Part shown: positions 212 through 35,868 of the stretch, piece by piece
Numbering within the stretch: the stretch's first letter is position 1
How the letters are laid out: each line of letters starts with the position of its first letter
Made by a program: the position numbers and the translations under genes
From: Octopus bimaculoides
Taxonomy: Eukaryota
Direction: 5' to 3'
Length of the DNA: 37,993 nt
Assembly: GCF_001194135.2 (NCBI RefSeq)
Contig: NC_068995.1
Span: forward strand, 42,233,201-42,271,193
The notes under the pieces: model-generated
Database searches by the model: none
Seen by the model: only the letters and a program-made list of their open reading frames with translations
What the model was told of the DNA's origin: nothing

Positions 212-277
<66 letters not shown>

Positions 278-1270: not shown

Positions 1271-1844
1271 NNNNNNNNNNNNNNNNNNNNNNNNNNNNNN
1301 NNNNNNNNNNNNNNNNNNNNNNNNNNNNNNNNNNNNNNNNNNNNNNNNNNNNNNNNNNNNNNNNNNNNNNNNNNNNNNNNNNNNNNNNNNNNNNNNNNNN
1401 NNNNNNNNNNNNNNNNNNNNNNNNNNNNNNNNNNNNNNNNNNNNNNNNNNNNNNNNNNNNNNNNNNNNNNNNNNNNNNNNNNNNNNNNNNNNNNNNNNNN
1501 NNNNNNNNNNNNNNNNNNNNNNNNNNNNNNNNNNNNNNNNNNNNNNNNNNNNNNNNNNNNNNNNNNNNNNNNNNNNNNNNNNNNNNNNNNNNNNNNNNNN
1601 NNNNNNNNNNNNNNNNNNNNNNNNNNNNNNNNNNNNNNNNNNNNNNNNNNNNNNNNNNNNNNNNNNNNNNNNNNNNNNNNNNNNNNNNNNNNNNNNNNNN
1701 NNNNNNNNNNNNNNNNNNNNNNNNNNNNNNNNNNNNNNNNNNNNNNNNNNNNNNNNNNNNNNNNNNNNNNNNNNNNNNNNNNNNNNNNNNNNNNNNNNNN
1801 NNNNNNNNNNNNNNNNNNNNNNNNNNNNNNNNNNNNNNNNNNNN
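1271..1844. other. Assembly gap (574 N)
   Basis: Run of N. Confidence 1.
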
Positions 1845-2780: not shown

Positions 2781-2796
2781 CAGTTATTCTATCGTA

Positions 2797-3078
2797 AGTA
2801 CTTATTCTATCAGTCTCTAAGTTATTGGGACGTAAACATACCAGCATCGGTTGTCAAGCGATGCTGAAGGGGACAAACACAGACACAGAAACATATACAC
2901 ACCATACACATATATACATATATACAACGGGCTTCTTTCAGTTTCCATCTACCAAATCCACTCACAAGGCTTTGGTCGGCCCGAGGCTATAGCAGAAGAC
3001 ACTTGCCCAATGTGCCACGGCACTCGGAACCATGTGGTTAGTAGGCAAGCTACTTACCACAGAGCCACTCCAACGCCT
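2797..3078 (-). mobile_element. SINE family A, head to mid-tail
   Basis: Head GGAGTGGCTCTGTGGTAAGTAGCTTGC, CTTGGGCAAGTGTCTTC-type core, internal CA/TA tract, tail ending at AATAAGTACT. Confidence 0.9.
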
Positions 3079-3650: not shown

Positions 3651-3795
3651 NNNNNNNNNNNNNNNNNNNNNNNNNNNNNNNNNNNNNNNNNNNNNNNNNN
3701 NNNNNNNNNNNNNNNNNNNNNNNNNNNNNNNNNNNNNNNNNNNNNNNNNNNNNNNNNNNNNNNNNNNNNNNNNNNNNNNNNNNNNNNNNNNNNNN
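3651..3795. other. Assembly gap (145 N)
   Basis: Run of N. Confidence 1.
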
Positions 3796-3848
3796 ATATA
3801 TATATACATACACACAAATACATACATACATGTTTTTCTTTTCTTTTC

Positions 3849-4045
3849 TTTTACTTGTTTTATTCATTTGATTGCGGCCATACTGGAGCATCGCATTTAG
3901 TCGAAGAAATCGACCCCATGACTTATTCTTTGTACGCCGACCACTTATTCTATCGGTCTCTTTAGCCGAACCGCTAAGTTACGGGGACGTAAATACATTG
4001 ACATCAGTTGTCCAGTGATGGTATGAGAACAAACACAGAAACACA
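3849..4045 (-). mobile_element. SINE family A, 3' module
   Basis: TCATTTGATTGCGGCCATACTGGAGCA...GAAATCGACCCC...CCGAACCGCTAAGTTACGGGGACGTAAA. Confidence 0.9.
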
Positions 4046-4049
4046 AATA

Positions 4050-4169
4050 TATACATATACATATACAGACAAATACATACAGACACCTACATATACATGC
4101 AAATACATAAATAAATACACACACACACACACACACACATACACACATATATATATATACATCATATGC

Positions 4170-6600: not shown

Positions 6601-6907
6601 TGCCTGCACTGATATTGATATTTTACACAAAGCGAACTATGTAGAGATGTATAGTATAAAAGAAAATACATAGGGCGTGGTGACTTTCATGCCTTAGCAA
6701 ATGGTATCAGCGGACCAAATACACTAAACTTGCTTCAGCTTAAAATCGAAACTGTATCGCAGAAATTCAGTCCCTGTGTTATTTGCCTCTTGTTTAAATC
6801 GCAATACTTATAGTGGTTTCTAAGCTAATGCGTCCACACAGATTTCCAGTAGGGCGATGGAGTGAGGTGGGTAATCAAATCAATTGTATTGATCCTGACA
6901 TAGGAGA

Positions 6908-7130
6908 AGGCTGCAAGTTCGCAGAATCGTTAGTACGCCGGCCAAAATGCTTAACGTCATTTACTCTGGCTCTTTGCGTTCTGGGTTCAAACTCTGCCGA
7001 AGTCGACTTTGCTTTTCATCCTTTCGGGGGTCAATAAAATAAACTCTCGTTGGCCACTGAGTCGATGTAATAGACTTATCACCTCCCCCGAACTTGCTAG
7101 CCTTGGGCGAAAATCTGAGACCAGTATTAT
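6908..7130 (+). mobile_element. SINE family E, copy 1
   Basis: GCAGAATCGTTAG head, GGGTTCAAACT B-box-like, GTCGACTTTGCTTTTCATCCTTTCGGGG core, tail GAGACCAGTATTAT. Confidence 0.85.
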
Positions 7131-7135
7131 AGGAA

Positions 7136-7369
7136 AGGCGGTGAGCTGGCAGAATCATTAGCGCACCGGACGAAGTGCTTAGCGGTATTTTGTCTGCCGC
7201 TATGCTCTGAGTTCAAATTCCGCCGAGGTTAACTTTGCCTTTCATCCTTTCGGAGTCGATAAATTAAGTACCAGTTACGCACTGGGGTCGATGTAATCGA
7301 CTTAATATCTTTGTCTCTCCTTGTTTGTTCCTTCTATGTTTAAGACCCTTGTGGGCAATAAAAAAATAA
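7136..7369 (+). mobile_element. SINE family E, copy 2 (alternative tail)
   Basis: GGCGGTGAGCTGGCAGAATC...GAGTTCAAATTCCGCCGAGG...GATAAATTAAGTACCAG...CTGGGGTCGATGTAATCGACTT; tail CTTGTGGGCAATAAAA. Confidence 0.9.
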
Positions 7370-7501
7370 GAAACGTTAGCACGCCAGGCGACATGCTTAA
7401 CGGTATTTCGCCCGTCTTTACGTTATGAGTTCAAATTCTACCAAAGTCGACTTTGACTTTCACCCTTTCAGGAACAATAGAATAAGTATCATTTGAACAC
7501 T
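7370..7501 (+). mobile_element. SINE family E, copy 3 (truncated)
   Basis: GTTAGCACGCCAGGCG..ATGCTTAACGGTATTTCG..GAGTTCAAATTC..GTCGACTTTG. Confidence 0.85.
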
Positions 7502-7511
7502 TCCCCTAAGG

Positions 7512-7605
7512 ATCACAGAAGGGTAAACGGCAAATTCGACTTGGGTGCGATTTGAACTCAGAATGTAAAGAGATAAAAACGAAATATGGCCAGGCATTTT
7601 ACCCC
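7512..7605 (-). mobile_element. SINE family E, copy 4 (fragment)
   Basis: GGCAAATTCGAC..ATTTGAACTCAGAATGTAAAG..CGAAAT..GCATTTT. Confidence 0.75.
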
Positions 7606-7830
7606 ATAATATTGGTCTCAAATTTTGGTACGAGGCCAACAAGTTCGGGAAATGGGGTAAGTCGATGACATCGACTCTAGTGCGCAACTCGTACTTATTT
7701 TATCGATCCCAAAAGGATGAATGGCAAAGTCGATCTCGATTGAATTTGAACTCAGAACGGGAAGACGGACGAAATAGGGTTCAGCATTTTCTCCCTCCCC
7801 GGCATGCTAACGATTCTACCAGCTCACCCC
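7606..7830 (-). mobile_element. SINE family E, copy 5
   Basis: Head-to-tail colinear with the reverse complement of copy 1. Confidence 0.85.
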
Positions 7831-7849
7831 CACTTCATCATAGCATCTG

Positions 7850-8068
7850 ATAATATTTGTTTCAAATTTTGGCACAAGGCCAGCAGTTTAGGGGTGAGAT
7901 TTAGTCGATTACAACGACCCTAGTGCGCATCAGGTCCTTATTTTATTGAATCCGAGAGGATGAAAGGCAAAGTCGACCTCGGTGGTATTTGATCTCAGAA
8001 CGTGGAGACGGACGAAATATTGCTCAGTATTTTCTTCCGGCATTCTAACGAGGCTGCCAACTCGCCCT
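7850..8068 (-). mobile_element. SINE family E, copy 6
   Basis: GGATGAAAGGCAAAGTCGACCTCGG...CTCAGAACG; colinear with copy 5. Confidence 0.85.
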
Positions 8069-9020: not shown

Positions 9021-9730
9021 NNNNNNNNNNNNNNNNNNNNNNNNNNNNNNNNNNNNNNNNNNNNNNNNNNNNNNNNNNNNNNNNNNNNNNNNNNNNNNNN
9101 NNNNNNNNNNNNNNNNNNNNNNNNNNNNNNNNNNNNNNNNNNNNNNNNNNNNNNNNNNNNNNNNNNNNNNNNNNNNNNNNNNNNNNNNNNNNNNNNNNNN
9201 NNNNNNNNNNNNNNNNNNNNNNNNNNNNNNNNNNNNNNNNNNNNNNNNNNNNNNNNNNNNNNNNNNNNNNNNNNNNNNNNNNNNNNNNNNNNNNNNNNNN
9301 NNNNNNNNNNNNNNNNNNNNNNNNNNNNNNNNNNNNNNNNNNNNNNNNNNNNNNNNNNNNNNNNNNNNNNNNNNNNNNNNNNNNNNNNNNNNNNNNNNNN
9401 NNNNNNNNNNNNNNNNNNNNNNNNNNNNNNNNNNNNNNNNNNNNNNNNNNNNNNNNNNNNNNNNNNNNNNNNNNNNNNNNNNNNNNNNNNNNNNNNNNNN
9501 NNNNNNNNNNNNNNNNNNNNNNNNNNNNNNNNNNNNNNNNNNNNNNNNNNNNNNNNNNNNNNNNNNNNNNNNNNNNNNNNNNNNNNNNNNNNNNNNNNNN
9601 NNNNNNNNNNNNNNNNNNNNNNNNNNNNNNNNNNNNNNNNNNNNNNNNNNNNNNNNNNNNNNNNNNNNNNNNNNNNNNNNNNNNNNNNNNNNNNNNNNNN
9701 NNNNNNNNNNNNNNNNNNNNNNNNNNNNNN
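9021..9730. other. Assembly gap (710 N)
   Basis: Run of N. Confidence 1.
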
Positions 9731-12084: not shown

Positions 12085-12138
12085 ATGTACGTGTGTGTGT
12101 GTGCATATGTGCGTGCGTGCATGCTCGTGTGTGTGTGT

Positions 12139-12368
12139 CTGTGCCTGTTCCCCCACCACCACTTGACAACCGGTGCTGGTGTAATTACGCACCCCTCCTT
12201 AACTTAGATGTTCGGCAAAAGCAACCGATAGAATAAGTACTAAACTTTAAAAAATAATAGAAAATGTACCGGGGCGGTTTCATTCGACTAGAATTCTTCA
12301 AGGCGGTGCCCCAGCGTGGCTACAGTCTAATGAGTGAAACATAAAAGAATAAAAGAATAAAAGGAATA
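12139..12368 (+). mobile_element. SINE family A, 3' module with (AAAAGAAT)n tail
   Basis: CTTGACAACCGGTGCTGGTG...GTTCGGCAAAAG..CCGATAGAATAAGTACT...AAGGCGGTGCCCCAGC; follows (GT)n. Confidence 0.85.
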
Positions 12369-12373
12369 CATAA

Positions 12374-12417
<44 letters not shown>

Positions 12418-12760: not shown

Positions 12761-13058
12761 NNNNNNNNNNNNNNNNNNNNNNNNNNNNNNNNNNNNNNNN
12801 NNNNNNNNNNNNNNNNNNNNNNNNNNNNNNNNNNNNNNNNNNNNNNNNNNNNNNNNNNNNNNNNNNNNNNNNNNNNNNNNNNNNNNNNNNNNNNNNNNNN
12901 NNNNNNNNNNNNNNNNNNNNNNNNNNNNNNNNNNNNNNNNNNNNNNNNNNNNNNNNNNNNNNNNNNNNNNNNNNNNNNNNNNNNNNNNNNNNNNNNNNNN
13001 NNNNNNNNNNNNNNNNNNNNNNNNNNNNNNNNNNNNNNNNNNNNNNNNNNNNNNNNNN
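12761..13058. other. Assembly gap (298 N)
   Basis: Run of N. Confidence 1.
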
Positions 13059-13706: not shown

Positions 13707-14031
13707 NNNNNNNNNNNNNNNNNNNNNNNNNNNNNNNNNNNNNNNNNNNNNNNNNNNNNNNNNNNNNNNNNNNNNNNNNNNNNNNNNNNNNNNNNNNNNN
13801 NNNNNNNNNNNNNNNNNNNNNNNNNNNNNNNNNNNNNNNNNNNNNNNNNNNNNNNNNNNNNNNNNNNNNNNNNNNNNNNNNNNNNNNNNNNNNNNNNNNN
13901 NNNNNNNNNNNNNNNNNNNNNNNNNNNNNNNNNNNNNNNNNNNNNNNNNNNNNNNNNNNNNNNNNNNNNNNNNNNNNNNNNNNNNNNNNNNNNNNNNNNN
14001 NNNNNNNNNNNNNNNNNNNNNNNNNNNNNNN
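13707..14031. other. Assembly gap (325 N)
   Basis: Run of N. Confidence 1.
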
Positions 14032-14086
14032 NCATATATATAAAATCAGACAAAGTTGGAATTTCTTTGATATATATATGTGTGTG

Positions 14087-14479: not shown

Positions 14480-15490
14480 AGAACTCAGAACTTGAAGTAA
14501 ACATTCAATTCACGATGGAATATAACCATCAACAACTTCTCTTCGACATTCTCATTAAGAAATCTAACAACGTAATAGAAACAGACATATACTATAAGCC
14601 CACGGACTCCAAGCAATATCTACCGTTCAACTCATGCCACCCCAGACACACCAGAATGGATATCCCCTTCAACCTAGTAAAAAGGATATGTACTATAGTT
14701 TCTAATGCAAGCACCAGAGACACACGACTGCATGAACTAAAGGATACACTCATCACCAGGTACTACCCACCTTCACTAATTGACATATGCTTTCAACGTG
14801 CCCTTCAACTCAACATCCAGGAACTCAGACATCCCAAATTAAAGAAGGATTTACAACCAAAAGCCCTACCATACATCTCCACATACAAACCTCTTAACAA
14901 TGAAACCTTCAAAACATTCCCTTGCTATAAAAAGGGCTACAGAATGAGCTTAATCCTCGAAACGCACACCATCATAAAACAGCAAGAGACAACCCAAATC
15001 TATAAAATGTCTCCTAACACAAGCCCGAATACTCCCAACAACACAGAAGCCTTCAGTAAAAAAAATGCGGAAGACCCAACTGTGGGATATGCGTGAATTT
15101 AATTGAGGGATCAGAGTTCTCCTTCAAACAGGGATGTTTCACAGTGCATAGCAACTTCACATGTGCATCGGAGAACCTGATATATGCACTAACCTGCTCT
15201 GGGTGTCAAGAGCAATACATAGGCCAAACAAAAACAGTCTTCGTAAAAGAATGGCTCTGCACAGATCCCAGATCAAAATTCCCCAAAACAGAAAAATACC
15301 ATTCAGCCAACGTATCGGTATTTGCGCCAATAACAAAAATCCAAGCTTCAATATTTTTCCACTCTACCAATTCAGCGACGATGCAACCTGTTGCCAACGA
15401 ATTAGAAAAGAGACTCTCTTTATTACAAAATACAGACCCCTTTTGAACGCGTCTACAACAAACGACATATCCACCACGGCCCTAGAATAA
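14480..15490 (+). pseudogene. Penelope-like retroelement, 5'-truncated: RT thumb plus GIY-YIG endonuclease
   Basis: IQFTME..LLFDILI..TDIYYKPTDSKQYLPFNSCHPRH (PLE RT C-terminus); NFTCASENLIYALTCSGCQEQYIGQT (LIY at 15177, YIG at 15216); LRKRMALHRSQI...KETLFITKYRPLLN. Several frameshifts; RT catalytic DD absent. Confidence 0.92.
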
Positions 15491-15995
15491 CACAAACGCA
15501 CACGCAAATGTTAAAAAATGATCCACACAAGAGATTCCCAAGAATTTATTAAAAAACAGTCCCAATCGCTGCTATAATCCATAACAAGTTCTTTTAGGTC
15601 ACTTGACCATTTAACACCCTACTACTATCATACTACCTACATTCCTTCTTACTCTCCCTTCTCTTTCTCCTTCTTCTTTGTCTTCTTCTTCTTTGTCTTC
15701 TTCTTCTTTGTCTTCTTCTTCTTTGTCTTCTTCTTCTTTGTCCTCTTCTTCTTTGTCTTCTTCTTCTTTGTCTTCTTCTTCTTTGTCTTCTTCTTCTTTG
15801 TCTTCTTCTTCTTTGTCTTCTTCTTCTTCTCCGCCAACTCCTTCCTTACTTTACTACTACTGCTGTTTAGAATAACACCTACGCAAATTTTATAAACGAT
15901 ACATTCAAAAGAGATATCTCAAGAATTCAATCATTACTATCGTCCATTACAGGTCACTTTCAGGTCACTTGACCATTTAACACACTACTATCATG
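15483..15995 (+). repeat. Diverged direct repeat of the Penelope 3' end (15483-15633 and 15868-15995)
   Basis: Both start TAGAATAACAC and share the identical 22-mer AGGTCACTTGACCATTTAACAC (15596 and 15962). Confidence 0.85.
15668..15825. repeat. 15-bp minisatellite (TTCTTCTTCTTTGTC)n, about 10 units
   Basis: Direct reading; explains the KKKTK and SSSSL ORFs. Confidence 0.95.
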
Positions 15996-16048: not shown

Positions 16049-16381
16049 NNNNNNNNNNNNNNNNNNNNNNNNNNNNNNNNNNNNNNNNNNNNNNNNNNNN
16101 NNNNNNNNNNNNNNNNNNNNNNNNNNNNNNNNNNNNNNNNNNNNNNNNNNNNNNNNNNNNNNNNNNNNNNNNNNNNNNNNNNNNNNNNNNNNNNNNNNNN
16201 NNNNNNNNNNNNNNNNNNNNNNNNNNNNNNNNNNNNNNNNNNNNNNNNNNNNNNNNNNNNNNNNNNNNNNNNNNNNNNNNNNNNNNNNNNNNNNNNNNNN
16301 NNNNNNNNNNNNNNNNNNNNNNNNNNNNNNNNNNNNNNNNNNNNNNNNNNNNNNNNNNNNNNNNNNNNNNNNNNNNNNNNN
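16049..16381. other. Assembly gap (333 N)
   Basis: Run of N. Confidence 1.
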
Positions 16382-16430: not shown

Positions 16431-16964
16431 ATGAAATATCAAGTTAAGAAAAACGAGTATTTTCGACACCTCCTTCTTTTTGCTTTTAAACAAGGTTCTA
16501 AGGCTGCAAAAGCTGCTCGTGACATTTGTGCTGTGTATAGACGGGGTGCCATAGATGAAAGAACCGTTCGTGATTGGTATGCCAAGTTCAAAAATGGAAA
16601 TTTTGACCTCAAAGATGCACCTCGTTCTGTCCGTCCAGATGAGTTCGATGAAGAACGATTAAACCAACTTTTGCACGAAAGTTCTCGTCAAACGACAAGG
16701 GAACTGGCAGAGAAAATGAAATGCTCCCACGCTGCTATAGAGAAGCATCTTCACTCGATGGGAAAGGTTTAGAAGTATGGAACATGGGTTCCGCATGCTT
16801 TAAGTGACAACAAAAATTAACGAGCCACAATTTACTTGCTCGTCACCGCTCAACTCATGGACACAAGCAACGATTTCTTTACCGAATCGTTACTGGCGAC
16901 GAAAAATAGTGCCTGTACATCAATATGAAGCAGCGTAAGGAATGGCTTAGCCCTGGTAAACAAG
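16431..16964 (+). pseudogene. mariner transposase relic (mellifera/cecropia-like), N-terminal half
   Basis: FRHLLLFAFKQG..ERTVRDWYAKFKNGNFDLKDAPRS.RP; TTRELAEK; stop; WVPHAL (16785); RIVTGDEK* (first catalytic D); NMKQRKEWLSPGKQ, then abrupt end. Confidence 0.95.
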
Positions 16965-17838
16965 ATAAGAAAATTGTTAAATGAAGAAATAGAAAGTATT
17001 GCTTCAGATGGACACTGTTTTAGATCAAAACTGGATGACACGACAAGTAATATTCATGTAGCTATTCTGCTCCCCAAACACAAACTGCTTAATTCGATCT
17101 ATGAACCAGTGGATTATTGTTACATTTGAAGCTTAATTTAGGGTGCGTAATTAAATTCTCTTATGGTGAAAGTAAACCTATTGTAACGGAATTTTGGCGT
17201 GGTTCCCTTTTCATAAAATGCAATTAAAAATTTGACGAGAAGACAAACATCCGTAATGAATCTTATCGATGACAAAATCTATCTCAAGACTGCATGACAA
17301 ACTTCATGGGTCTTCAGGAGCCAATGCAAAATGTTCACCAGGAGATAGTTGAGCTGATACATCCGGTTGCATTTAACGAAATGTATAAAGGACGTGGTGG
17401 AACTTTTATTTTATTAAAATTATTGTAGTTCTGACCATCCATACATTGAGCTTCAAATATATGACAGAAATTTATTTTGGATTCTTTAGCGAACTTGAAG
17501 CGAAATAAAAGTCAAGAATATTTCTGAACAAAATTTTAAGGAAAATGATAAAAAAAAGTAATAAATGAAATAAATGAATAAATAAATAAAATGGCCACCA
17601 CTAACAATAACAACAATAACACGCACGATGTAATCGAAGGGTGACCTTTCCTTTGCAGTTTGGTGTGATATTTTCCCTAAAGTAAGGCTGTTCTTTCAGA
17701 GATAAACCATATTTCTCTGGTATCCGATCTAAACCAGTTTCGTATTTCGTAAAAAGGAAATAACTTTGGTATTTATAGAAGAGAGAAAGCGAGAGAGAGG
17801 CAGAGAGAGAGAGAGAGAGAGAGAGAGGCAGAGAGAGA

Positions 17839-18150
17839 NNNNNNNNNNNNNNNNNNNNNNNNNNNNNNNNNNNNNNNNNNNNNNNNNNNNNNNNNNNNNN
17901 NNNNNNNNNNNNNNNNNNNNNNNNNNNNNNNNNNNNNNNNNNNNNNNNNNNNNNNNNNNNNNNNNNNNNNNNNNNNNNNNNNNNNNNNNNNNNNNNNNNN
18001 NNNNNNNNNNNNNNNNNNNNNNNNNNNNNNNNNNNNNNNNNNNNNNNNNNNNNNNNNNNNNNNNNNNNNNNNNNNNNNNNNNNNNNNNNNNNNNNNNNNN
18101 NNNNNNNNNNNNNNNNNNNNNNNNNNNNNNNNNNNNNNNNNNNNNNNNNN
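17839..18150. other. Assembly gap (312 N)
   Basis: Run of N. Confidence 1.
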
Positions 18151-18977: not shown

Positions 18978-19271
18978 NNNNNNNNNNNNNNNNNNNNNNN
19001 NNNNNNNNNNNNNNNNNNNNNNNNNNNNNNNNNNNNNNNNNNNNNNNNNNNNNNNNNNNNNNNNNNNNNNNNNNNNNNNNNNNNNNNNNNNNNNNNNNNN
19101 NNNNNNNNNNNNNNNNNNNNNNNNNNNNNNNNNNNNNNNNNNNNNNNNNNNNNNNNNNNNNNNNNNNNNNNNNNNNNNNNNNNNNNNNNNNNNNNNNNNN
19201 NNNNNNNNNNNNNNNNNNNNNNNNNNNNNNNNNNNNNNNNNNNNNNNNNNNNNNNNNNNNNNNNNNNNNNN
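18978..19271. other. Assembly gap (294 N)
   Basis: Run of N. Confidence 1.
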
Positions 19272-19382
19272 ATATATATACATCCATACATCCATACATC
19301 CATACATACACACACACACACACACACACACATACACACATATAGCGACTTCACCCTATGTGCTATAGCATATATATATATA

Positions 19383-19540
19383 TAGACGACAGACTTTTTC
19401 TGCCTACCAAATCCACTCACAAGACTTTGGTCGAACCGATGCTAAAGTAGAAGAAATTTGCTCAAGGTGACACGCAGTGGGACGGAATGCGGAACCATAT
19501 GATTGTGAAGCAAGTTTCTTACCACACAGTCACGCATAGG
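19383..19540 (-). mobile_element. SINE family A, 5' half
   Basis: CTACCAAATCCACTCACAAGACTTTGGTCG...CACGCAGTGGGAC...CTTACCACACAGTCAC. Confidence 0.85.
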
Positions 19541-19554
19541 AGAAATGACGTTAA

Positions 19555-19853
19555 ACACAAGTTTATATAATTTGTTTCTACGTACGTTTCACCATTGTGT
19601 TTGCTTGGAATGCAGCATTGGATATTCAAAGTGCAATTGGGTTCTTAATCACAACAGATCATCGGGAAACACTTTATTGCGCTTGTTGTAGAGAGCTAAT
19701 GCCTCATTAATTCTCTGCAACGTAAAACAAAAATGTCTTCCCCTGATGATGCGACGTAGTTAAGTACCTAAGTGCAGTTGGAATATCCAATGCAGAATTC
19801 GAAACAACCAGAATGGTGAGACGTACGTAGGAACAAATGATACAAACTTGTGT
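19555..19853. repeat. About 300-nt imperfect palindrome with a 3-nt loop
   Basis: Outer 81 bp pair without gaps at 69/81; similarity continues inward to GTTGTAGAGAGCTAATG-CCT-CATTAATTCTCTGCAAC. Confidence 0.9.
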
Positions 19854-20148
19854 AGATCATAATTTCTCTTATAAGTTCTGTATACCATAAGCAGTTAAGC
19901 AGTACTATTATTAAGTACAATAGTACCACTACACTGTACATTTCTTCAAAGGAGCCATGTTAAGGAAACACTCGGTTTAAAGGGTACGTCGTTGATGAGA
20001 TGTTGATGATACTGTCGACATTACTGTAGTTGTTCTGATTATTAATGTTGTTAGTATTGCTACCGATGTCTTCGTCCTTAGAATGGTTTCCTATTGAATT
20101 TCGAAAAAAAAAGCGTTGAAGAATTATAGATGTTTTCGATGAGTAGAA

Positions 20149-20337
20149 TTATAGATGTTTTCGATCTAGTTTAGATTCTTTGCCATCAAATTTGAATTCT
20201 TTGCCATCAAATTTGAATTCTTTACCATCAAATTAGAATTCTTTGCAATCAAATTTGAATTCTGTCCAATCAAATTTGATGGCAAAGAATTCAAATCTGA
20301 TGGCAAAGAATCCAAACTAGATCGAAAACATCTATAA
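20149..20337. repeat. 189-nt foldback element with 68-bp arms and 21-bp internal tandem units
   Basis: 20149-20216 versus 20270-20337, 2 mismatches; unit GAATTCTTTGCCATCAAATTT, 5 forward and 2 reverse. Confidence 0.95.
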
Positions 20338-20591
20338 ATAATTAAACTAAGTTTCACTACAGCCTAACTCTAGGACAAGGTGAACGCTTTGAATTTCAGT
20401 TACAGCCCATATGATGGGCTTCCACACAGTTTCCGTTTACATGACTTCCAGATTAACTCCAGGTCATGGTTGAAAACTTTTGTCCAAAACAGATATACCA
20501 TGGCGTAATTATCGAACCTCTGACCTTTACATTCCAAAATATGTTTCTTACTCTGAGTCCTTATATACGTAACACACTTTAGTACTCGGAT

Positions 20592-20641
<50 letters not shown>

Positions 20642-20797
20642 NNNNNNNNNNNNNNNNNNNNNNNNNNNNNNNNNNNNNNNNNNNNNNNNNNNNNNNNNNN
20701 NNNNNNNNNNNNNNNNNNNNNNNNNNNNNNNNNNNNNNNNNNNNNNNNNNNNNNNNNNNNNNNNNNNNNNNNNNNNNNNNNNNNNNNNNNNNNNNNN
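20642..20797. other. Assembly gap (156 N)
   Basis: Run of N. Confidence 1.
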
Positions 20798-21853: not shown

Positions 21854-21983
21854 NNNNNNNNNNNNNNNNNNNNNNNNNNNNNNNNNNNNNNNNNNNNNNN
21901 NNNNNNNNNNNNNNNNNNNNNNNNNNNNNNNNNNNNNNNNNNNNNNNNNNNNNNNNNNNNNNNNNNNNNNNNNNNNNNNNNNN
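21854..21983. other. Assembly gap (130 N)
   Basis: Run of N. Confidence 1.
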
Positions 21984-22424: not shown

Positions 22425-22590
22425 ACTCTCTCTCCCTCTCTCTCTCTCTCTGTGTCCCTTTCTCTCTCTCTCTGTGTCCCTTTCTCTCTCTCTCTGTGTC
22501 CCTTTCTCTCTCTCTGACCCTTTCTCTTTCTCTGTCCCTCTCTCTCTGTCCCCCTCTCTCTCTGTCCTCCTCTCTCTCTGTCCCTCTCTC
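22425..22590. repeat. CT-rich compound repeat with recurring TGTGTCCCTTT/TGTCCC interruptions
   Basis: Direct reading. Confidence 0.9.
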
Positions 22591-22886: not shown

Positions 22887-23170
22887 CTGCAGAGATACAA
22901 AGAAATATATAAACCCGGAGGAGATACTCCTGCAACGTCTTATCTGGCAGTAACTGGAAAGTGGAAACTAACCCGAAGGGAGATAACTAAGTTTGACATG
23001 AATACTGCATAATATTTCTACTTGAATGCATCATCTCTCTTACCTTTCACCGATGTGAATATATGTCGGTATAGGTGTTGATATAAACGCAGTATATACT
23101 GTATATCGTATTTTGTAAAAAAAAAGAAAAAAAGAAACAGCTTCGAATATGCTTCACTGAAGTGTGTAAT

Positions 23171-23539
23171 GGAGGCGCAATGGCCCTGTGGTTAGGGCAG
23201 CGGACTCGCGGTCATAGGATCGCGGTTTGGATTCCCAGACTGGGCGTTGTGAGTGTTTATTGAGCGAAAACACCTAAAGCTCCACGAGGCTCCGGCAGGG
23301 GGTGGTGGCGAACCCTGCTGTACTCTTACTTCCTGTTTCTGTTGTGCCTGTAACTCAAAGGGCCAGGCTTGTCACCCTCTGTGTCACGCTGAATATCCCC
23401 GAGAACTACGTTAAGGGTACACGTGTCTGTGGAGTGCTCAGCCACTTGCACGTTAATTTCACGAGCAGGCTGTTCCGTTGATCGGATCAACTGGAACCCT
23501 CGACGTCGTAATCGACGGAGTGCCAACAACAAGAACAAC
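23171..23539 (+). mobile_element. SINE family B, full-length with 12-bp target-site duplication
   Basis: tRNA-like head, (ACA)n-type tail, flanked by GAAGTGTGTAAT at 23159-23170 and 23540-23551. Confidence 0.95.
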
Positions 23540-25910: not shown

Positions 25911-26100
25911 ACAATCCCTGAAAATTTTGAAGGGAACATGTTAGTCGATTATATCGACTACAGTGCTCAGCGGATACATATTTAATCGACCCAGAAAGGC
26001 TGTAAAAAACAAGTCTACCTCAGTGGCATTTGAACTCAGAACGTAAAGTTGGACGAAATGCCTCTAAGAATTTTGTCCGGCACGCTAACGATTCTGCCAG
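25911..26100 (-). mobile_element. SINE family E
   Basis: TTAGTCGATTATATCGAC...ATCGACCCAGAAAGG...ATTTGAACTCAGAACGTAAAG...CACGCTAACGATTCTGCCAG. Confidence 0.85.
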
Positions 26101-26439
26101 TACACCGACTTAAAAAGAATACACCCACACACACATCTGCGTGTGTGTGTGTGTGTGCGTGCGTGCGAGTGTGGCCATATGTGTGTCAGTACGTATGCGT
26201 ATGTATATATTTATGTGGGCTACTCTCCGATATGCTTTATTTATTTTAACAGCTATACACAGCCTTATATACCCCTTATATACCCGGGAAACACTAAACA
26301 TCTTCAGGCTTCTTTCATTATATTCATTCACCCTCCTACATATCCATTCCGTTTTCTTTTTTTAATCAAATCACACTTTCCACCTGTTTTCTCATCATTT
26401 ATATTTCATATACTATTGTCTATACGCCTTTACTACTTA

Positions 26440-27113: not shown

Positions 27114-27683
27114 TTACATCTTTATATAGCCTGCTTTACCATATATAACTTTAAATATTCTCTTATCAACTGATTTTGTCAATTTCTCAACAATCTCACT
27201 TTTGATATTACTTGCAGCAGTTTTTATTGCTTCCCATAGTAAATCTGTGTTTGGATATTGTTTACCATTCGAATATACATCTTTTTTAAAAATTGACCGC
27301 AAATCCTCTATTGGGAGAATGGCGGCGCCATCTCATTATCTTAAGTTCTTGGAAACCTTTCTGAGCTAAATGTTTAATAGTGAGTTTGGCAGACTGTGAA
27401 GGGGCATTATCATGCATAAACACGGTCTTTAACTTGAAACTTCGCGATGTTGACTTGTACCAATGAAAGAAGTTGTTATCTAGAACCTTGCAATAATTTT
27501 CAGCATTTATTTTGATTCCATCAGCAACTTTAAATGGACCTATAATATCTCCTCCAACTATACCAGCCCAAAACGATTCCCCCACTACCTTGCTGTCTTC
27601 TTAATCGTGTTGGTTGATTATTCCATGTAACACCCAGCCGCTTGCCCATCCATCAGGTCCATCTAATGTTGCTCTTCACTCAT
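27114..27683 (-). pseudogene. Tc1-like DDE transposase relic, catalytic domain and C-terminus
   Basis: E*RATLDGPDGW..RLRRQQG..FWAGIVG..GPFKVADGIKINAENYC; VFMHDNAPS; PIEDLRSIFKKDVYSNGKQY. Frameshifted; N-terminus cut at the adjoining SINE. Confidence 0.92.
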
Positions 27684-27870
27684 TTACTCTTTTAATTGTT
27701 TCTGTCATTTGACTGCGGCCATGCTGGGGCACCGCCTTTAGTCGAGCAAATCAACCTCAGGACTTATTCTTTGTAAGCCTAGTACTTATTATATCGGTCT
27801 CTTTTGCCGAACCGCTAATGTTACGGGGACGTAAACACACCAGCATCGGTTGTCAAGCGATGTTGTGGGA

Positions 27871-27915
<45 letters not shown>

Positions 27916-28095
27916 TTACATATATTATATACGACGGGCTTCTTTCAGTTTTCCGTCTACCAAATCCACTCACAAGGCTTTGGTCGGCCCGAGGCTATAG
28001 TAGAAGACACTTGCCCAAGGTGCCACGCAGTGGGAATGAACCCTGAACCATGCGGGTGGTAAGCAAGCTGCTTACCACTCAGCCACTCCTGCGTC
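27684..28095 (-). mobile_element. SINE family A, full-length, internal (CA)n
   Basis: Complete head-core-microsatellite-tail, colinear with 31757-32154. Confidence 0.95.
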
Positions 28096-28539
28096 GTGTG
28101 TATATTAAAGTAAAATATTCGGCAAAGTCACTGTGTTTTGGTCGTCATTATAGCAGGTCGTAGTTCTATTTTATAAGGACTGGACCCGGGACTAAACAAA
28201 CGACACCAGCAACAGTAACAACTACAATAACAATAAGGTTTATTTTATAGCAGCTGTATCGTCTCCATCTCAGTTACTGATGAAAATATGAGATTGCTGA
28301 TGTCACTACATACCTCTACAGAACAGTTTAACGATGACCCTAATACGTTCTGCATTCTGCACTTGTTGACACACCGGTGAGCAGAGTTGGAGGGTTGGTG
28401 CGGTCCATCTGTTGATCTGGTCATTGATAAACTGTGTACTTAGTAGACCTGTGTCAGACCACCTGCAGACGGGAGCTCTACATTGTTGATAATGTTACAG
28501 TTGTTCTTATTGTTCTTTAGCACTATGTTAACCCATATT

Positions 28540-29053: not shown

Positions 29054-29139
29054 GATTTTGCAGTTATTGTTACAATTGCTGGTGTAGTAGCAGTTGTTGC
29101 TACGGACGGTTCTTTAATCTTTTACTTATTTCACTCATT

Positions 29140-29317
29140 AAATTGCGACCTTGCTGGGGCATTTTGAAGAATTTTAGTTTAAAAAAATCAACCCCAGTAC
29201 ATTATTTTATTTTAAGCCTGATACTTATTCTATCCTTTGATTTGCCGAAAAGCTAAGTTACGGGGACGTAAATATGCCAATGTCGGTTGTCAAGCAGAGC
29301 TGGGGACAAACACAGAC

Positions 29318-29377
<60 letters not shown>

Positions 29378-29528
29378 TACAATGCTTGCTTCAGTTTCCG
29401 TCAACCAAATCCACTCTCAAGGCTTTAGTCGCCCCGAAGATATATTAGTAGACACTTGCCCAAGGTGCGACACAGTGGGACTGAACCCGGAACCATGTTG
29501 CTAAGAATCAAACAGCTACGTGTGTGCC
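29140..29528 (-). mobile_element. SINE family A, diverged, A box missing
   Basis: Core and tail align; head reads TAGGCACA-CAC-GTAGCT on the minus strand. Confidence 0.85.
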
Positions 29529-29941: not shown

Positions 29942-30194
29942 GGGCGCAGGAGTGACTGTGTGGTTAATCGATACAGCTACTTCACCCCTTTTATGTTTGT
30001 CTGTCCTTGTTCGTACCCTCTTTGTAATGCCTTTATGGCAAATATTTATCAAATAAAGTAGCTTGCTTACGAACCACATGGTTCCAGGTTCAGTCCCACT
30101 GCGTGGCACCTTGGGCAAGTATCTTCTACTATAGCCTCGGGCCGACCAAAGACTTGTGAGTGGATTTGGTAGAGGAAACTGAAAGAAGCCCGTC

Positions 30195-30243
<49 letters not shown>

Positions 30244-30403
30244 TGTGTGTATATGTTTGTGTGCCTGTGTTTGTCCCCCCAACACCGCTTCACAACCGAT
30301 GCTGGTGTGTTTACGTCCCCGTAACTTAACGGTTCGGCAAAAGAGGCCGATAGAATAAGCACTAGGCTTACGAAGAATAAGTCCTGGGGTCGATTTTCTC
30401 GAC
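29942..30403 (+). mobile_element. SINE family A with a 91-bp insertion in the head, 3'-truncated
   Basis: GGGCGCAGGAGTGACTGTGTGGT [29965-30055 insert] AAGTAGCTTGC..., internal (TA)n, ends at GGGGTCGATTTTCTCGAC. Confidence 0.92.
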
Positions 30404-30733
30404 ATTTTTTCGGCTATCTTGGAAACGCCTGAAACATTCGTACACTTGTGTCCGGCTCATACACTCCTCTCCATGCACTTTCTGCAATTTTGCATAGGCC
30501 TCTGAGCAGATATCACCATGACAACTTTCTCTGTCATGATCAATATGATGATCACACGCTACACACCTTCCTTCCAAGCATTGCTGTAAACAGCAGAAGA
30601 GAACTAGAACGCTAAATCTTAACGTGCATGCACAACAGATTTCAAGATCAATCTCTGCCAACCGGCTTCACTCTGCATGCTTTAGCTTCGTTACTATGGC
30701 AACAGTCCGGATACTTATTGTTCAGAACTCGTA
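30404..30733 (-). mobile_element. mariner 5' end: TA, TIR, UTR and first helix-turn-helix region
   Basis: Minus strand: TA|CGAGTTCTGAACAATAAGTATCCGGACTGT (mariner-type TIR, 30731-30702); MTEKV..GDICSEAYAKLQKVHGEECMSRTQVYECFRRFQDSRKNV. Confidence 0.88.
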
Positions 30734-30879
30734 TTTCTCTTTTACTTTTTACCATTGACTGCTTTTTTTCTGTCTTCTACGTCTCTCTCCTAACTTTATT
30801 CGCCCTCTCCAACCGTATGACTACCTCTTTCACTTTTTCTCTAAATTTCTGTCTTCGTCGTTTGACTCTCCTCCTGTCT

Positions 30880-31045
30880 CCCCTCTCTCTCTCTTTTACA
30901 TTCAGTCTCTCTCTCTCTCTCTCTCTCTTTTACATTCAGTCTCTCTCTCTCTCTCTCTTTTACATTCAGTCTCTCTCTCTCTCTCTTTTACATTCAGTCT
31001 CTCTCTCTCTCTCTCTCTTTTACATTCAGTCTCTCTCCCTCTCAC
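30880..31045 (+). repeat. Compound minisatellite [(TC)n-TTTTACATTCAG] x5
   Basis: 12-mer at 30894, 30928, 30958, 30986 and 31018. Confidence 0.95.
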
Positions 31046-31619: not shown

Positions 31620-31742
31620 TTATTCGTGTACTGGTTTCAAATTTTGCCCAAGTCTACTTTAGTTTTCTCTATTTGAGGCCGATAGCAACGACTAAACCCG
31701 TTCCTCCCAAAATTGCTGGCCTCGTGCTGAAATCAGAAATAA
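31620..31742 (+). mobile_element. SINE family E, heavily decayed
   Basis: GGTTTCAAATTTTGCCCAAGTCTACTTT...CCCAAAATTGCTGGCCTCGTGCTGAAAT resembles the E core and tail. Confidence 0.55.
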
Positions 31743-31756
31743 TTATTACTGTTATA

Positions 31757-32154
31757 GGCACAGGAGTGGCTGTGTGGTAAGTAGCTTGCTTACCAACCAC
31801 ATGGTTCCGGGTTCAGTCCCACTGCGTGGCACGTTGGGCAAGTGTCTTCTACTATAGCCTCGGGCCGACCAATGCCTTGTGAGTGGATTTGGTAGACTGA
31901 AACTGAAAGAAGCCCGTTGTATATATGTATATGTATATATCTGTGTGTGTGTTTGTATGTCTGTGTTTGTCCCCCCAACATCGCTTGACAACTGATGCTG
32001 GTGTGTTGAGGTCCCCGTAACATTAGCGGTTCGGCAAGAGAGTTTGATAGAATAAGTACTAGGCTTACAAAAGAATATGTCCTGGGGTCGATTTGCTCGA
32101 TTAAAGGCGGTGCACCAGCATGGCCGAAGTCAAATGACTGAAACAAGTAAAAAA
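31757..32154 (+). mobile_element. SINE family A, full-length (reference copy)
   Basis: A-box-like TGGCTGTGTGG, B-box-like GGTTCAGTCCC, CORE-like TTGGGCAAGTGTCTTC, short internal TA/TG tract, tail CAAATGACTGAAACAAGTAAAA. Confidence 0.95.
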
Positions 32155-32390
32155 ATTACTGTTATAGGCACAGGAGTGGCTGTGTGGTACTTTTATATAT
32201 AAAAGAGGTGAGGATCGGAATCCTTCAAAAGTCCGCCGGTACAATCCAGGCAAAGAATATATAGAAATACATATTCAGTATTTGCAAAATCAATAAATAA
32301 AGTATAAGGACAGGAAAAAAGAAATATAGGTGTAGACAATCTTTTATTTAAATCCAAGTTGGTACAAAACTGATATATGTTATACAAATA

Positions 32391-32596: not shown

Positions 32597-32796
32597 TTTA
32601 CGCAAAATGTTTAACGCTATTTCGTCCATTTAACGTTCCGACTTCAAATTCCGCCGAAGTCGACTTTGCCTTTTATTGTTTCGGGGGTCGATGAAATACG
32701 TATCAGTCGAGCATTGGGATCGATTTAATCGATTAGCTCCCTTCCTCAAAATTACATTCTATTTATCTTTTCCTACCAAAAATTTCAGGTCTCGTA
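32597..32796 (+). mobile_element. SINE family E
   Basis: TTCAAATTCCGCCGAAGTCGACTTTGCC...GGGGTCGATGAAATACGTATCAG...ATCGATTTAATCGATT. Confidence 0.85.
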
Positions 32797-34628: not shown

Positions 34629-35102
34629 CACGCACGCACGCACATACACATACTCTTGGCATCACAAATATGCTTAATGTTACCGCAAGTTTTACAGATA
34701 TGTTCAATGTGACTTCGAGAAACACTAATAAAACTGTAGTTACATCCAAAAGATGTAACAAAAACACCATGTCGCTGGCTAGAAACGCGTTGCTTACAAA
34801 GAAAGTAAGGAAAATAACCATGATATACACTCTTCCCACATGCAAAAGCCCCTCCTTTAAAACCGTTAAAAATAGATATAAATATTCACTCCTATGATTT
34901 TATATATGTGCACAGATACGTGCGCACGCAGACAAGTAGACGTGCAAATGACCATACATGTACGCTCGTACACGCTTCTACACGCATTTGCCGTTGAAGG
35001 TTTTTGACATGAAGGTGCGTAACTTACACGGAAATGTTCACTTCTCAAAAAGTATGGTGTGGCGAAGGTAGTTTGCCACACGAAAATCTGTGTACATAAG
35101 GG

Positions 35103-35192
35103 GCGGCAAACCGGCAGAATCATTGGCAAGCCGGGCGACATGCTTAGCGGTATTTCGTCTGCGGTTACGTTCTGAGTTCAAATTCCGCCGAG
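35103..35192 (+). mobile_element. SINE family E, head only
   Basis: GGCAGAATCATTGGCAAGCCGGGCGACATGCTTAGCGGTATTTCG...GAGTTCAAATTCCGCCGAG. Confidence 0.85.
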
Positions 35193-35327
35193 CACGGAAA
35201 CTGAAACACAACAAAAGCTACACAAAGCCTTACATTTGAAAAACCTTTTTTTAAAACAGTGAAACCGGTCAAGTCAATAAACATCTTTAAAAGACCTCTG
35301 CATTTTCAAATTATATATATATATATA

Positions 35328-35663
35328 GGCGCAAGAGTGGCAGTGTGATAAGTAGCTTGCTTACCAACCACATGATTCCGGGTTCAGTCCCACTGCGTGG
35401 CACCTTGGGCAAGTGTCTTCTACTATAGACTCGTGCCGACCAAAGACTTGTGAGTGGATTTGGTAGACGGAAACTGAAAGAAGCCCGTCGTATATATATA
35501 TATGTATATGTTTGTATCTATGCTTGTCCCCCACCATCGCTTGACAACCGATGTTGTTGTGTTTACGTCTCCGTAACTTAACGGTTCGGCAAAAGAGTCC
35601 GATAAGATAAATACTAGGCTTACAAAGAATAAATCCTGGGGTCGATTTGTTCGACTAAAGGCG
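35328..35663 (+). mobile_element. SINE family A, lacking the terminal tail
   Basis: Colinear with the reference copy to CGACTAAAGGCG. Confidence 0.95.
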
Positions 35664-35701
35664 AATAAAGGAAAGAATACACACACACACATATACATAC
35701 A

Positions 35702-35730
<29 letters not shown>

Positions 35731-35732
<2 letters not shown>

Positions 35733-35868
35733 GGGCTTCTTTCAGTTGTCGCCTTCCAAATCTACTCACAAGGCTGAAGCTAGAGTAGAAGACACTTGAC
35801 TAAGGAGCCACTGGGTGAGGCCGAAACCGGAACCATGTGTCCGGGAAGCATATCTCTTACGACACAAT
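35731..35868 (-). mobile_element. SINE family A, 5' half, diverged
   Basis: GGGCTTCTTTCAGTT...CTCACAAGGCT...AGAAGACACTTG...GGAACCATGTG; adjoins (TACA)n. Confidence 0.8.

What the first reader, a model, noticed from the sequence alone, without database searches (positions are those of the whole stretch)
20120..20337. Foldback element built from a 21-bp unit that flips orientation at an internal palindrome
68-bp arms with only 2 mismatches enclose units of GAATTCTTTGCCATCAAATTT starting at 20173, 20194, 20215, 20236, 20257, then two reversed units (20272, 20293). The switch happens on the palindrome TCAAATTTGA (20270-20279). Outer units match the consensus best and inner units are mutated. A further 21-bp direct duplication (20120-20140 = 20145-20165) sits at the left edge. 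This resembles Foldback-type transposons with arrayed transposase-binding sites, or a replication template switch. It lies 300 bp from the palindrome above.
Basis: partly seen in the sequence, partly recalled or inferred. Interest (0 to 1): 0.75.

Follow-up and report, generated by a model that had tools for sequence, protein, structure and literature searches.

The report
Small foldback repeat in octopus DNA
A real 189-base hairpin-forming repeat, built from a 21-base unit that reverses direction, sits in junk-rich octopus DNA; it is most likely a small non-coding "foldback" jumping-gene remnant or a local copying error, and either way a known kind of thing.

Summary
Window 20149-20337 is a 189-bp foldback with 68-nt arms that differ at 2 positions. 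It holds five direct 21-bp units and two reversed ones, and the orientation flips on the palindrome TCAAATTTGA. A 25-bp tandem duplication straddles the left edge. The single strand folds at -72 kcal/mol (z = -16).

The window is a gap-ridden draft scaffold of an octopod, packed with SINEs, mariner and Penelope-like remnants and microsatellites.

I could not show mobility.
- No second copy occurs in the 34.7 kb of the window that is not N, or in 60 kb of Octopus vulgaris DNA.
- The only collections I could scan are prokaryotic, viral or metagenomic. They gave only chance 20-mers.
- The only flanking repeat is TA. Because TA is a palindrome, it cannot be told apart from an extension of the arms.
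- The 8-10-bp duplication expected of Foldback/Mutator elements is absent.

One replication template switch inside a pre-existing 21-bp minisatellite reproduces every detail, including the 5-versus-2 unit asymmetry and inner units older than the arms.

Verdict: the structure is real. It is either a foldback-type MITE (about 0.45) or a local template-switch hairpin (about 0.37). Both are known kinds, so interest is low. A BLAST against complete octopus assemblies would settle it.

The parts
20120..20144 (+). Leftmost 25-bp tandem duplicate. Its first 21 nt are identical to 20145-20165, followed by GAGT. It includes 4 nt (AGAA) that lie outside the inverted repeat.
   Evidence: family D4, 100% identity, spacing 25
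20150..20151 (.). Left TA dinucleotide, a candidate TA target-site duplication. Ambiguous because TA is a palindrome.
   Evidence: offset 3, k = 2
20149..20216 (+). Left arm of the inverted repeat: the terminal 24-mer, then units L1 and L2, ending with the palindrome TCAAATTTGA at 20207-20216.
20152..20172 (+). Terminal degenerate unit L0 (TAGATGTTTTCGATCTAGTTT). It is in register with the array and matches the unit consensus at 13 of 21 positions.
   Evidence: empirical frequency 8.5e-4
20173..20277 (+). Five direct 21-bp units L1-L5, with 2, 0, 2, 1 and 3 mismatches to GAATTCTTTGCCATCAAATTT. L4 and L5 share a C-to-A change at unit position 12.
20217..20269 (+). Loop of the hairpin. It has no unique sequence and consists of the more diverged units L3-L5.
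20270..20279 (.). Palindrome TCAAATTTGA, on which the unit orientation flips (axis between 20274 and 20275).
   Evidence: pair I6 (arms with 0 nt between them)
20270..20337 (-). Right arm: reversed units R1 (20272-20292, 0 mismatches) and R2 (20293-20313, 2 mismatches), then the reversed terminal 24-mer at 20314-20337.
20335..20336 (.). Right TA dinucleotide, a candidate TA target-site duplication. Ambiguous.

Best explanation
This is a real, non-coding foldback repeat of about 189 bp in an octopod genome. It consists of nothing but an array of 21-bp units that reverses direction on the 10-bp palindrome carried by every unit.

Most likely it is one copy of a small non-autonomous DNA transposon, a foldback-type MITE. 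Under this reading:
- the two arms (a diverged terminal unit plus two subterminal units each) are the terminal inverted repeats;
- a transposase encoded elsewhere would bind the repeated units, pair the ends, cut at the termini and reinsert the element, probably at a TA as Tc1/mariner enzymes do;
- the unequal unit number (5 versus 2) and the 25-bp duplication at the left end are later slippage or repair accidents, favoured by hairpin extrusion.

Shown: the structure, its statistical significance, its hairpin potential, the lack of coding capacity and the TE-rich octopod context.

Inferred: mobility, the TA target, transposase binding to the units, and the superfamily.

Whichever reading is right, the flip sits exactly on the unit's own palindrome with no unique spacer. 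This implies that the foldback was first made by a hairpin or template-switch copying event in a direct array, either here or in a master copy.
For: - Sharp 68-nt arms at 97% identity, with a perfectly conserved 24-nt terminus in both arms.
- Size of 189 bp and 28.6% G+C. The only ORF across it is a 63-aa repeat translation with no relatives.
- TA dinucleotides flank TAGATG...CATCTA on both sides.
- The host is an octopod. The SINE ORF at 31790-32146 matches O. vulgaris and O. bimaculoides proteins.
- In octopus, Tc1-Mariner families are the most numerous recently active TIR elements, and MITEs are annotated (PMC13282606).
- Mariner remnants lie in the same window.
- A second, older MITE-like palindrome with possible TA flanks lies 277 bp away.
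- TIRs made of tandem subrepeats with variable unit numbers define foldback elements. That architecture is thought to have arisen independently in several superfamilies (PMC4079207).
- The two arm mismatches and the arm asymmetry argue that this is evolved genomic sequence, not an artefact.
Against: - No second copy in the 34.7 kb of the window that is not N or in 60 kb of O. vulgaris DNA.
- No similarity of the termini to the mariner fragments in the window.
- The TA flanks are palindromic and merge with the arms, so they prove nothing.
- No 8-10-bp duplication is present. The best candidate matches 8 of 10 positions, and only if the outer duplicated end is used.
- The left 25-bp duplication spans the flank/arm boundary, so it is a local event, not transposition.
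- The inner units are significantly more diverged than the arms: 6 of 63 positions against 2 of 136, Fisher p = 0.013. A recent local inverted duplication predicts this directly.
Confidence: 0.45

Rival explanations
1. A local, non-mobile inverted duplication. A 21-bp minisatellite (L0-L5) was already at this locus. During replication or break repair, the nascent strand ending in TCAAATTTGA (20270-20279) re-annealed to the identical palindrome at 20207-20216 on the complementary or nascent strand. It then copied L2, L1 and L0 backwards as far as 20149 and returned to the original template at 20338. This corresponds to the '3-2-1-4' type of the four-point template-switch model, which creates an inverted repeat.
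For: - One event reproduces the whole anatomy: 68-nt arms whose inner ends are the two palindromes, a 53-nt loop made of L3-L5, and the 5-versus-2 unit asymmetry.
- The arms are younger than the inner units (Fisher p = 0.013).
- The terminal segment is itself a degenerate unit, as expected at the edge of a minisatellite.
- The direct 25-bp duplication at the same boundary shows that local copying errors happened here.
- A direct ATAA|ATAA repeat sits at the return junction, 20334-20341.
- Minisatellites are frequent in this window.
- The mechanism and this event type are documented: 31% of high-confidence human-chimp events are of this type (PMC5453318). Template switching is also reported to create RNA hairpins (PMC8794818).
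- No other copy was found anywhere.
Against: - From my own knowledge, which I did not check in PMC5453318, documented short template switches are mostly tens of bases, so a 68-nt copy is long.
- MITE insertions are far commoner than such events in TE-rich genomes.
- The absence of other copies is weak evidence, because only about 95 kb of octopus DNA could be searched.
- The TA flanks also fit an insertion.
Confidence: 0.37
2. An internal or terminal fragment of a larger, unrecognised mobile element, for example a Helitron/Helentron-derived element carrying tandem repeats, as is common in molluscs. In that case the true element boundaries lie outside 20120-20337.
For: - Mollusc non-autonomous elements often carry tandem arrays (PMC3879986 and PMC7492417).
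- The neighbouring palindrome 19536-19872 lies only 277 bp away, next to a SINE copy that ends near 19533.
- The right flank contains a short stretch resembling the SINE core.
Against: - The flanks 19880-20148 and 20338-20592 have no repeated relatives in the window or in the O. vulgaris sample, beyond matches of about 30 nt.
- The arms end sharply, with AGAA on one side against TTAT on the other.
- The tandem-repeat MITEs described in the clam Donax trunculus (DTC84) have a central array of direct tandem repeats (PMC3879986 abstract), not inverted arrays of 21-bp units. From my own knowledge, their monomers are also much longer, about 150-170 bp.
Confidence: 0.1
3. An assembly artefact: a chimeric or collapsed foldback produced by short-read assembly of a repeat in a gap-rich draft.
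For: - The window has 10 N gaps, and the element lies in a 1370-bp contig between gaps.
- Repeats of 21 bp and reverse-complement k-mers are hard for de Bruijn assemblers, so the unit counts in particular may be wrong.
Against: - Artefactual foldbacks are perfect palindromes about a single point.
- Here the arms differ at two positions, the arm lengths are unequal, and the loop units carry their own substitutions, including one shared by L4 and L5.
- The structure is shorter than a typical read pair.
Confidence: 0.05
4. A hairpin-RNA gene: a miRNA or endo-siRNA precursor maintained for its transcript.
For: - A 68-bp stem would be a Dicer or ADAR substrate if it were transcribed.
- An Rfam search at permissive thresholds reports long-hairpin MIR families over the element.
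Against: - All Rfam matches are far below the gathering scores (for example 101.8 against 230 bits).
- They occur equally on both strands and are to plant families, so they reflect only 'long perfect hairpin'.
- Nothing was found at gathering thresholds.
- The stem is much longer than an animal pre-miRNA.
- There is no evidence of conservation or expression.
Confidence: 0.03

Closest known systems
Foldback (FB-like) transposons: Drosophila FB, Galileo, Tetris (PMC4079207, PMC3573991)
   Same: The inverted arms are built from tandem subrepeats. The terminal domain differs from the internal repeats. The unit number is variable and unequal between the arms. There is little or no unique middle and no coding capacity.
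   Different: This one is far smaller: 68-nt arms against Tetris TIRs of up to 1,735 bp, and 21-bp units against about 220 bp in Tetris. No 7-10-bp target-site duplication is present. Neither multiple copies nor a transposase partner could be shown.
Stowaway-like / Tc1-mariner MITEs
   Same: Under 200 bp, AT-rich, non-coding and hairpin-forming, with possible TA flanks. It lies in a genome where Tc1-Mariner is the largest recently active TIR group.
   Different: Typical Stowaway-like MITEs have short simple TIRs and a unique core, not arms and a loop made wholly of one tandem unit. The termini show no similarity to the mariner remnants in the window.
Short-range template-switch mutations (four-point model, type 3-2-1-4; PMC5453318, PMC8794818)
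   Same: A reverse-complement copy of adjacent sequence that creates a hairpin, with the switch at a pre-existing palindrome or microhomology.
   Different: At 68 nt it is longer than the typical event (my own knowledge; I did not check the size distribution in PMC5453318). The ancestral state could not be examined.
Tandem-repeat-containing MITEs / Helentron-derived elements of bivalves (DTC84, pearl; PMC3879986, PMC7492417)
   Same: A mollusc genome, and a non-autonomous element that carries an internal tandem array.
   Different: DTC84 has a central array of direct tandem repeats; from my own knowledge the monomers of such elements are long (about 150-170 bp) and sit between distinct left and right modules. 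Here 21-bp units form the inverted arms themselves.

Membership tests
Foldback elements (FB / Mutator-related, as in Tetris) | Terminal inverted repeats composed of tandem subrepeats, with a distinct flanking or terminal domain | tested here: met
   Each arm is a diverged terminal unit plus 21-bp units, at miniature scale.
Foldback elements (FB / Mutator-related, as in Tetris) | 8-10-bp target-site duplication (PMC4079207) | tested here: not met
   No 8-10-bp direct repeat flanks 20149/20337. The best candidate matches 8 of 10 positions, and only when the outer duplicated end (20127) is used. That is not significant given about 200 combinations tried.
Foldback elements (FB / Mutator-related, as in Tetris) | Dispersed copies with variable unit number, and an autonomous partner encoding a transposase | not testable with these tools
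   No eukaryotic genome collection was available. There were 0 further copies in the 34.7 kb of the window that is not N plus 60 kb of O. vulgaris DNA.
MITE of the Tc1/mariner (Stowaway-like) type | Short (under 800 bp), non-coding, with terminal inverted repeats | tested here: met
MITE of the Tc1/mariner (Stowaway-like) type | TA target-site duplication | tested here: inconclusive
   TA is present at 20150-51 and 20335-36, but it is palindromic and continuous with the arms.
MITE of the Tc1/mariner (Stowaway-like) type | Termini shared with an autonomous Tc1/mariner element | tested here: not met
   The mariner remnants in the window (16431-16980, 30368-30661) share nothing with the 24-nt terminus. 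Only this window could be tested.
MITE of the Tc1/mariner (Stowaway-like) type | Multiple copies in the genome | not testable with these tools
   searched only prokaryotic, metagenomic and viral collections and found chance 20-mers. One search found none in 60 kb of O. vulgaris DNA.
Template-switch mutation (four-point model, type 3-2-1-4) | A segment that is the reverse complement of nearby sequence, with switch points at microhomology | tested here: met
   The inner ends of the arms are the identical 10-bp palindromes at 20207-20216 and 20270-20279. A weak ATAA repeat lies at the return junction.
Template-switch mutation (four-point model, type 3-2-1-4) | Ancestral or outgroup sequence lacking the inverted copy | not testable with these tools
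   No orthologous locus could be retrieved.
Rfam miRNA / hairpin RNA families | Score at or above the family's gathering threshold | tested here: not met
   One search found none. In one search the best score was 101.8 bits against a 230-bit threshold, on both strands, to plant families.

The most novel reading that the evidence does not exclude
The locus is a snapshot of the birth of a foldback element or hairpin. A single template switch on the palindrome inside a 21-bp minisatellite unit turned a plain direct array into a near-perfect 68-bp-stem hairpin with sharp ends. That would be the raw material from which foldback MITEs or hairpin-RNA loci (Dicer or ADAR substrates in an RNA-editing-rich cephalopod) could arise de novo. 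The second, larger array in the same window that also flips orientation (6913-8065) would then point to a recurrent process in this genome.
Probability: 0.3. Interest if true: 0.4.

Novelty: new member of a known kind. Interest (0 to 1): 0.2.

Why it matters
If it is a MITE, it adds one small foldback-type family to the poorly curated cephalopod repeat catalogue. It would also give a compact example of terminal repeats made entirely of a palindrome-bearing 21-bp unit.

If it is a local template switch, it is a clean, datable example of how a direct minisatellite becomes a long hairpin. The arms are about 3% diverged. That process has been proposed for the origin of hairpin RNAs and could seed foldback elements.

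Neither outcome would surprise a specialist in transposable elements. The practical value is mainly for annotation, and as a warning that such hairpins are fragile in short-read assemblies.

Tried and rejected
1. Other copies in the window. I searched for the 24-mer and the 21-mer with up to 3 mismatches and ran blastn at word size 7. Only the element itself was found.
2. Exact 20-mer scans of metagenome and prokaryote genome collections. Each gave 15 loci, and each locus carried a single chance match of 20-32 nt, one of them inside a bacterial gene. Two viral scans found nothing.
3. Searching in protein space for other copies. The 63-aa ORF across the element had no exact record and no homologue. 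The other open frame (55 aa) hit only unrelated heptad-repeat translations of other 21-bp repeats.
4. Full-text search of papers for the unit and the terminus as strings: none. The supplement of the O. vulgaris repeat paper holds no repeat library.
5. I fetched 60 kb of O. vulgaris DNA through SINE-derived proteins. The SINE and a 175-bp repeat family are shared, but the element, the neighbouring palindrome and both flanks are absent.
6. Target-site duplications of 2-10 bp at offsets of -2 to +8. Only TA, AT and TATA (all palindromic), a 3-bp AAT and an 8-of-10 10-mer turned up. None is convincing.
7. Rfam. Nothing at gathering thresholds. Sub-threshold matches on both strands to plant long-hairpin MIR families I rejected as generic hairpin matches.
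8. tRNA scan: none.
9. Identifying the organism through the Penelope-like ORF gave only anonymous ENA and Logan contigs. The SINE ORF gave the Octopus names.
10. I considered and rejected a nested insertion of one copy into another, because the sequence after 20337 does not continue the interrupted end.

Full report
**What is there**

- The repeat finder reports inverted arms at 20149-20216 and 20270-20337: 68 nt, 97% complementary, 53 nt apart. It also reports a perfect 21-nt direct duplication, 20120-20140 = 20145-20165.
- The 21-mer GAATTCTTTGCCATCAAATTT matches with up to 3 mismatches at 20173, 20194, 20215, 20236 and 20257 on the + strand and at 20272 and 20293 on the - strand. That is seven matches against 0.01 expected.
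- Tandem Repeats Finder gives period 21, 5.0 copies, 91% matches.
- The 24-nt terminus TTATAGATGTTTTCGATCTAGTTT occurs exactly twice in the window, once per arm.
- As single-stranded DNA the region folds into one long hairpin of -72 kcal/mol. Shuffles give -19.9 +/- 3.3, so z = -16.

**Refinements to the description**

- The two arm mismatches are both A/G, at 20173/20313 and 20189/20297.
- The perfect units are the second from each end (L2, R1). The outermost pair (L1, R2) share the variant GATTC, so the arms are copies of each other as wholes.
- The inner left units L3-L5 carry 2, 1 and 3 substitutions, and L4 and L5 share one of them.
- Substitutions are denser in the inner units (6 of 63 positions) than in the arms (2 of 136). 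Fisher p = 0.013.
- The terminal 21 nt (20152-20172) is itself a degenerate unit in register with the array, matching 13 of 21 positions. Only 29 of 34,213 window 21-mers do as well. The whole object is therefore one 21-bp periodic array, six units forward and three reversed.
- Each unit contains the 10-bp palindrome TCAAATTTGA, overlapping the palindrome GAATTC.
- The inner ends of the two arms are two copies of the 10-bp palindrome (20207-20216 and 20270-20279). The flip axis lies between 20274 and 20275, with no unique spacer.
- The left duplication is a tandem repeat of period 25 that includes 4 nt outside the arm. It is therefore a local duplication, not a transposition product.

**Context**

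- The window is a eukaryotic draft scaffold with ten N gaps. It is 38% G+C outside the gaps and saturated with microsatellites.
- It carries mariner remnants, seen as HTH_48 domains at 16431-16772 and 30368-30661.
- It carries a Penelope-like remnant at 14515-15096. Its relatives carry the HTH_animal, RVT_1 and GIY-YIG domains.
- It carries at least ten copies of a 350-400-bp SINE-like repeat.
- An ORF read through one SINE copy matches proteins named from Octopus vulgaris and O. bimaculoides at 55-80% identity. The SINE is also abundant in O. vulgaris chromosome pieces I fetched, with 13-17 hits in 60 kb at up to 91% identity. The host is therefore an octopod.
- A recent O. vulgaris repeat annotation reports that about 66% of the genome is repeats. 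Tc1-Mariner is the largest group of recently active TIR families, and MITEs are annotated (PMC13282606).

**Search for relatives**

- Nothing resembling the element occurs elsewhere in the window or in the 60 kb of O. vulgaris DNA.
- The DNA collections I could scan are prokaryotic, viral or metagenomic. They returned only isolated chance 20-32-mers.
- Two attempts to find other copies through their accidental ORFs failed. One gave no candidates. The other gave only unrelated heptad-repeat translations.
- A full-text search for the sequence strings found nothing.
- Copy number therefore remains unknown. The data only exclude a very abundant family, roughly more than one copy per 30 kb.

**Target-site duplication**

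I scanned all duplication lengths from 2 to 10 bp at offsets of -2 to +8.
- The only perfect candidates are TA (TA|TAGATG...CATCTA|TA) and its palindromic relatives, plus a 3-bp AAT.
- TA fits a Tc1/mariner insertion, but because it is palindromic it simply extends the inverted repeat. It cannot count as evidence.
- There is no 8-10-bp duplication of the kind reported for foldback elements assigned to the Mutator superfamily (PMC4079207).
- The best 10-mer matches 8 of 10 positions and needs the outer duplicated end. It is not significant after multiple testing, and it is too diverged for arms that are 97% identical.

**Interpretation**

Two readings remain.

(A) A foldback-type MITE.
- The arms are terminal inverted repeats made of subterminal units, as in FB, Galileo or Tetris but in miniature.
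- A transposase encoded elsewhere would bind the units.
- Unit-number asymmetry and the edge duplication are later accidents.
- Support: the sharp arm ends, the perfectly conserved termini, the size and composition, the TE-rich octopod context and the general predominance of TE insertions over other sources of long inverted repeats.

(B) A local template switch.
- Suppose a direct L0-L5 minisatellite was already here. A nascent strand ending in TCAAATTTGA at 20270-20279 re-anneals to the same palindrome at 20207-20216, copies back to 20149 and returns.
- That single event yields exactly the observed 68-nt arms, the 53-nt loop made of L3-L5, the 5-versus-2 asymmetry and arms younger than the inner units.
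- This is the '3-2-1-4' event type of the four-point model, which creates inverted repeats (PMC5453318). It has been proposed as a source of RNA hairpins (PMC8794818).

The neighbouring 25-bp direct duplication shows that local copying errors did occur at this boundary, but this is compatible with both readings.

I put (A) at about 0.45 and (B) at about 0.37.
- A fragment of a larger element: about 0.10.
- An assembly artefact: about 0.05. The two arm mismatches, the unequal arms and the loop-specific substitutions argue against it.
- A dedicated hairpin-RNA gene: about 0.03. The Rfam hits are sub-threshold, fall on both strands and are to plant families.

Under either of the two leading readings, the flip lies exactly on the unit's own palindrome. 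The foldback was therefore first created by a hairpin or template-switch copying event in a direct array. The open question is only whether that happened here or in a mobile master copy.

**Age**

The arms differ at 2 of 68 positions (JC 0.03). The calibration quoted for O. vulgaris repeats is JC 0.09 for about 25 million years. This suggests an age of a few million years, but with only two substitutions the uncertainty is very large.

**Comparison with known systems**

- The architecture is that of foldback transposons. Membership of the FB/Mutator group is not supported, because the defining 8-10-bp duplication was tested and not met.
- Membership of Tc1/mariner MITEs is undecided. The TA flanks are inconclusive, and no shared termini were found in the window.
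- It is unlike the tandem-repeat MITEs described in bivalves. DTC84 has a central array of direct tandem repeats (PMC3879986); from my own knowledge the monomers of such elements are also much longer, and PMC7492417 links similar arrays in the Pacific oyster to Helentron non-autonomous elements.
- Both leading explanations are known kinds of thing.

**Verdict**

Novelty is at most a new member of a known kind, and interest is low (0.2). The decisive test is a BLAST of the element and its flanks against complete octopod assemblies, with a long-read check of the locus.

Noticed in passing
window 19536-19872: A second, older hairpin-forming palindrome lies 277 bp upstream. It has 131-nt arms at 79% complementarity with a 75-nt spacer, and folds at -83.6 kcal/mol (z = -12). 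Possible TA flanks are TA|GGAGAAAT...ATTTCTCT|TA. It starts 2-3 bp after a SINE copy that ends near 19533. No other copy occurs in the window or in 60 kb of O. vulgaris DNA. It is MITE-like.
   Followed up: partly
window 6913-8065; also 25943-26111, 32637-32732, 35102-35192; L035 10933-11995: A much larger array also flips orientation. Units of about 175 bp, spaced about 230 bp apart, lie direct at 6900-7078, 7129-7368 and 7369-7494, then inverted at 7658-7831 and 7896-8066. The region is 67% self-complementary over 1153 bp. The unit is an interspersed repeat shared with O. vulgaris, where it also forms a direct tandem array.
   Followed up: partly
window 86-279, 973-1244, 2784-3078, 3817-4117, 12105-12375, 19308-19536, 27670-28106, 29111-29517, 30056-30403, 31738-32156, 35304-35867: At least eleven copies of a 350-400-bp SINE-like repeat with an internal microsatellite. 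It is shared with O. vulgaris at 79-91% identity (best hit per copy). ORFs read through it match 'hypothetical proteins' annotated in O. vulgaris and O. bimaculoides, which are therefore probably repeat-derived gene models.
   Followed up: partly
window 16431-16980 (+), 30368-30661 (-), 14515-15446 (+): Decayed transposon genes. Two are mariner N-terminal HTH_48 domains; the first has its frame broken after about 113 aa and lacks the catalytic domain. The third is a Penelope-like remnant whose relatives carry HTH_animal, RVT_1 and GIY-YIG domains. An ORF at 27286-27585 (-) looks by eye like the C-terminus of a Tc1-like transposase, but it had no Pfam hit.
   Followed up: partly
window 1271-1844, 3651-3795, 9021-9730, 12761-13058, 13707-14032, 16049-16381, 17839-18150, 18978-19271, 20642-20797, 21854-21983: Ten N gaps of 130-710 bp, most of them bordered by microsatellites such as (AC)n or (TA)n. 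This is a short-read draft whose contigs break at simple repeats, so unit counts in any tandem array here should be treated with caution.
   Followed up: no
window 15658-15828, 30876-31043 and 22426-22590: Other minisatellites: a 15-bp unit in 11.4 copies at 96% matches, a 30-32-bp unit in about 5 copies, and a 22-bp CT-rich unit in about 8 copies. Short tandem arrays are common in this region, which bears on the local-origin hypothesis.
   Followed up: no
window 23162-23432 and 1932-2225: A direct repeat of about 290 bp at 80% identity, 21 kb apart, also present in the O. vulgaris sample. It is another unclassified interspersed repeat.
   Followed up: no
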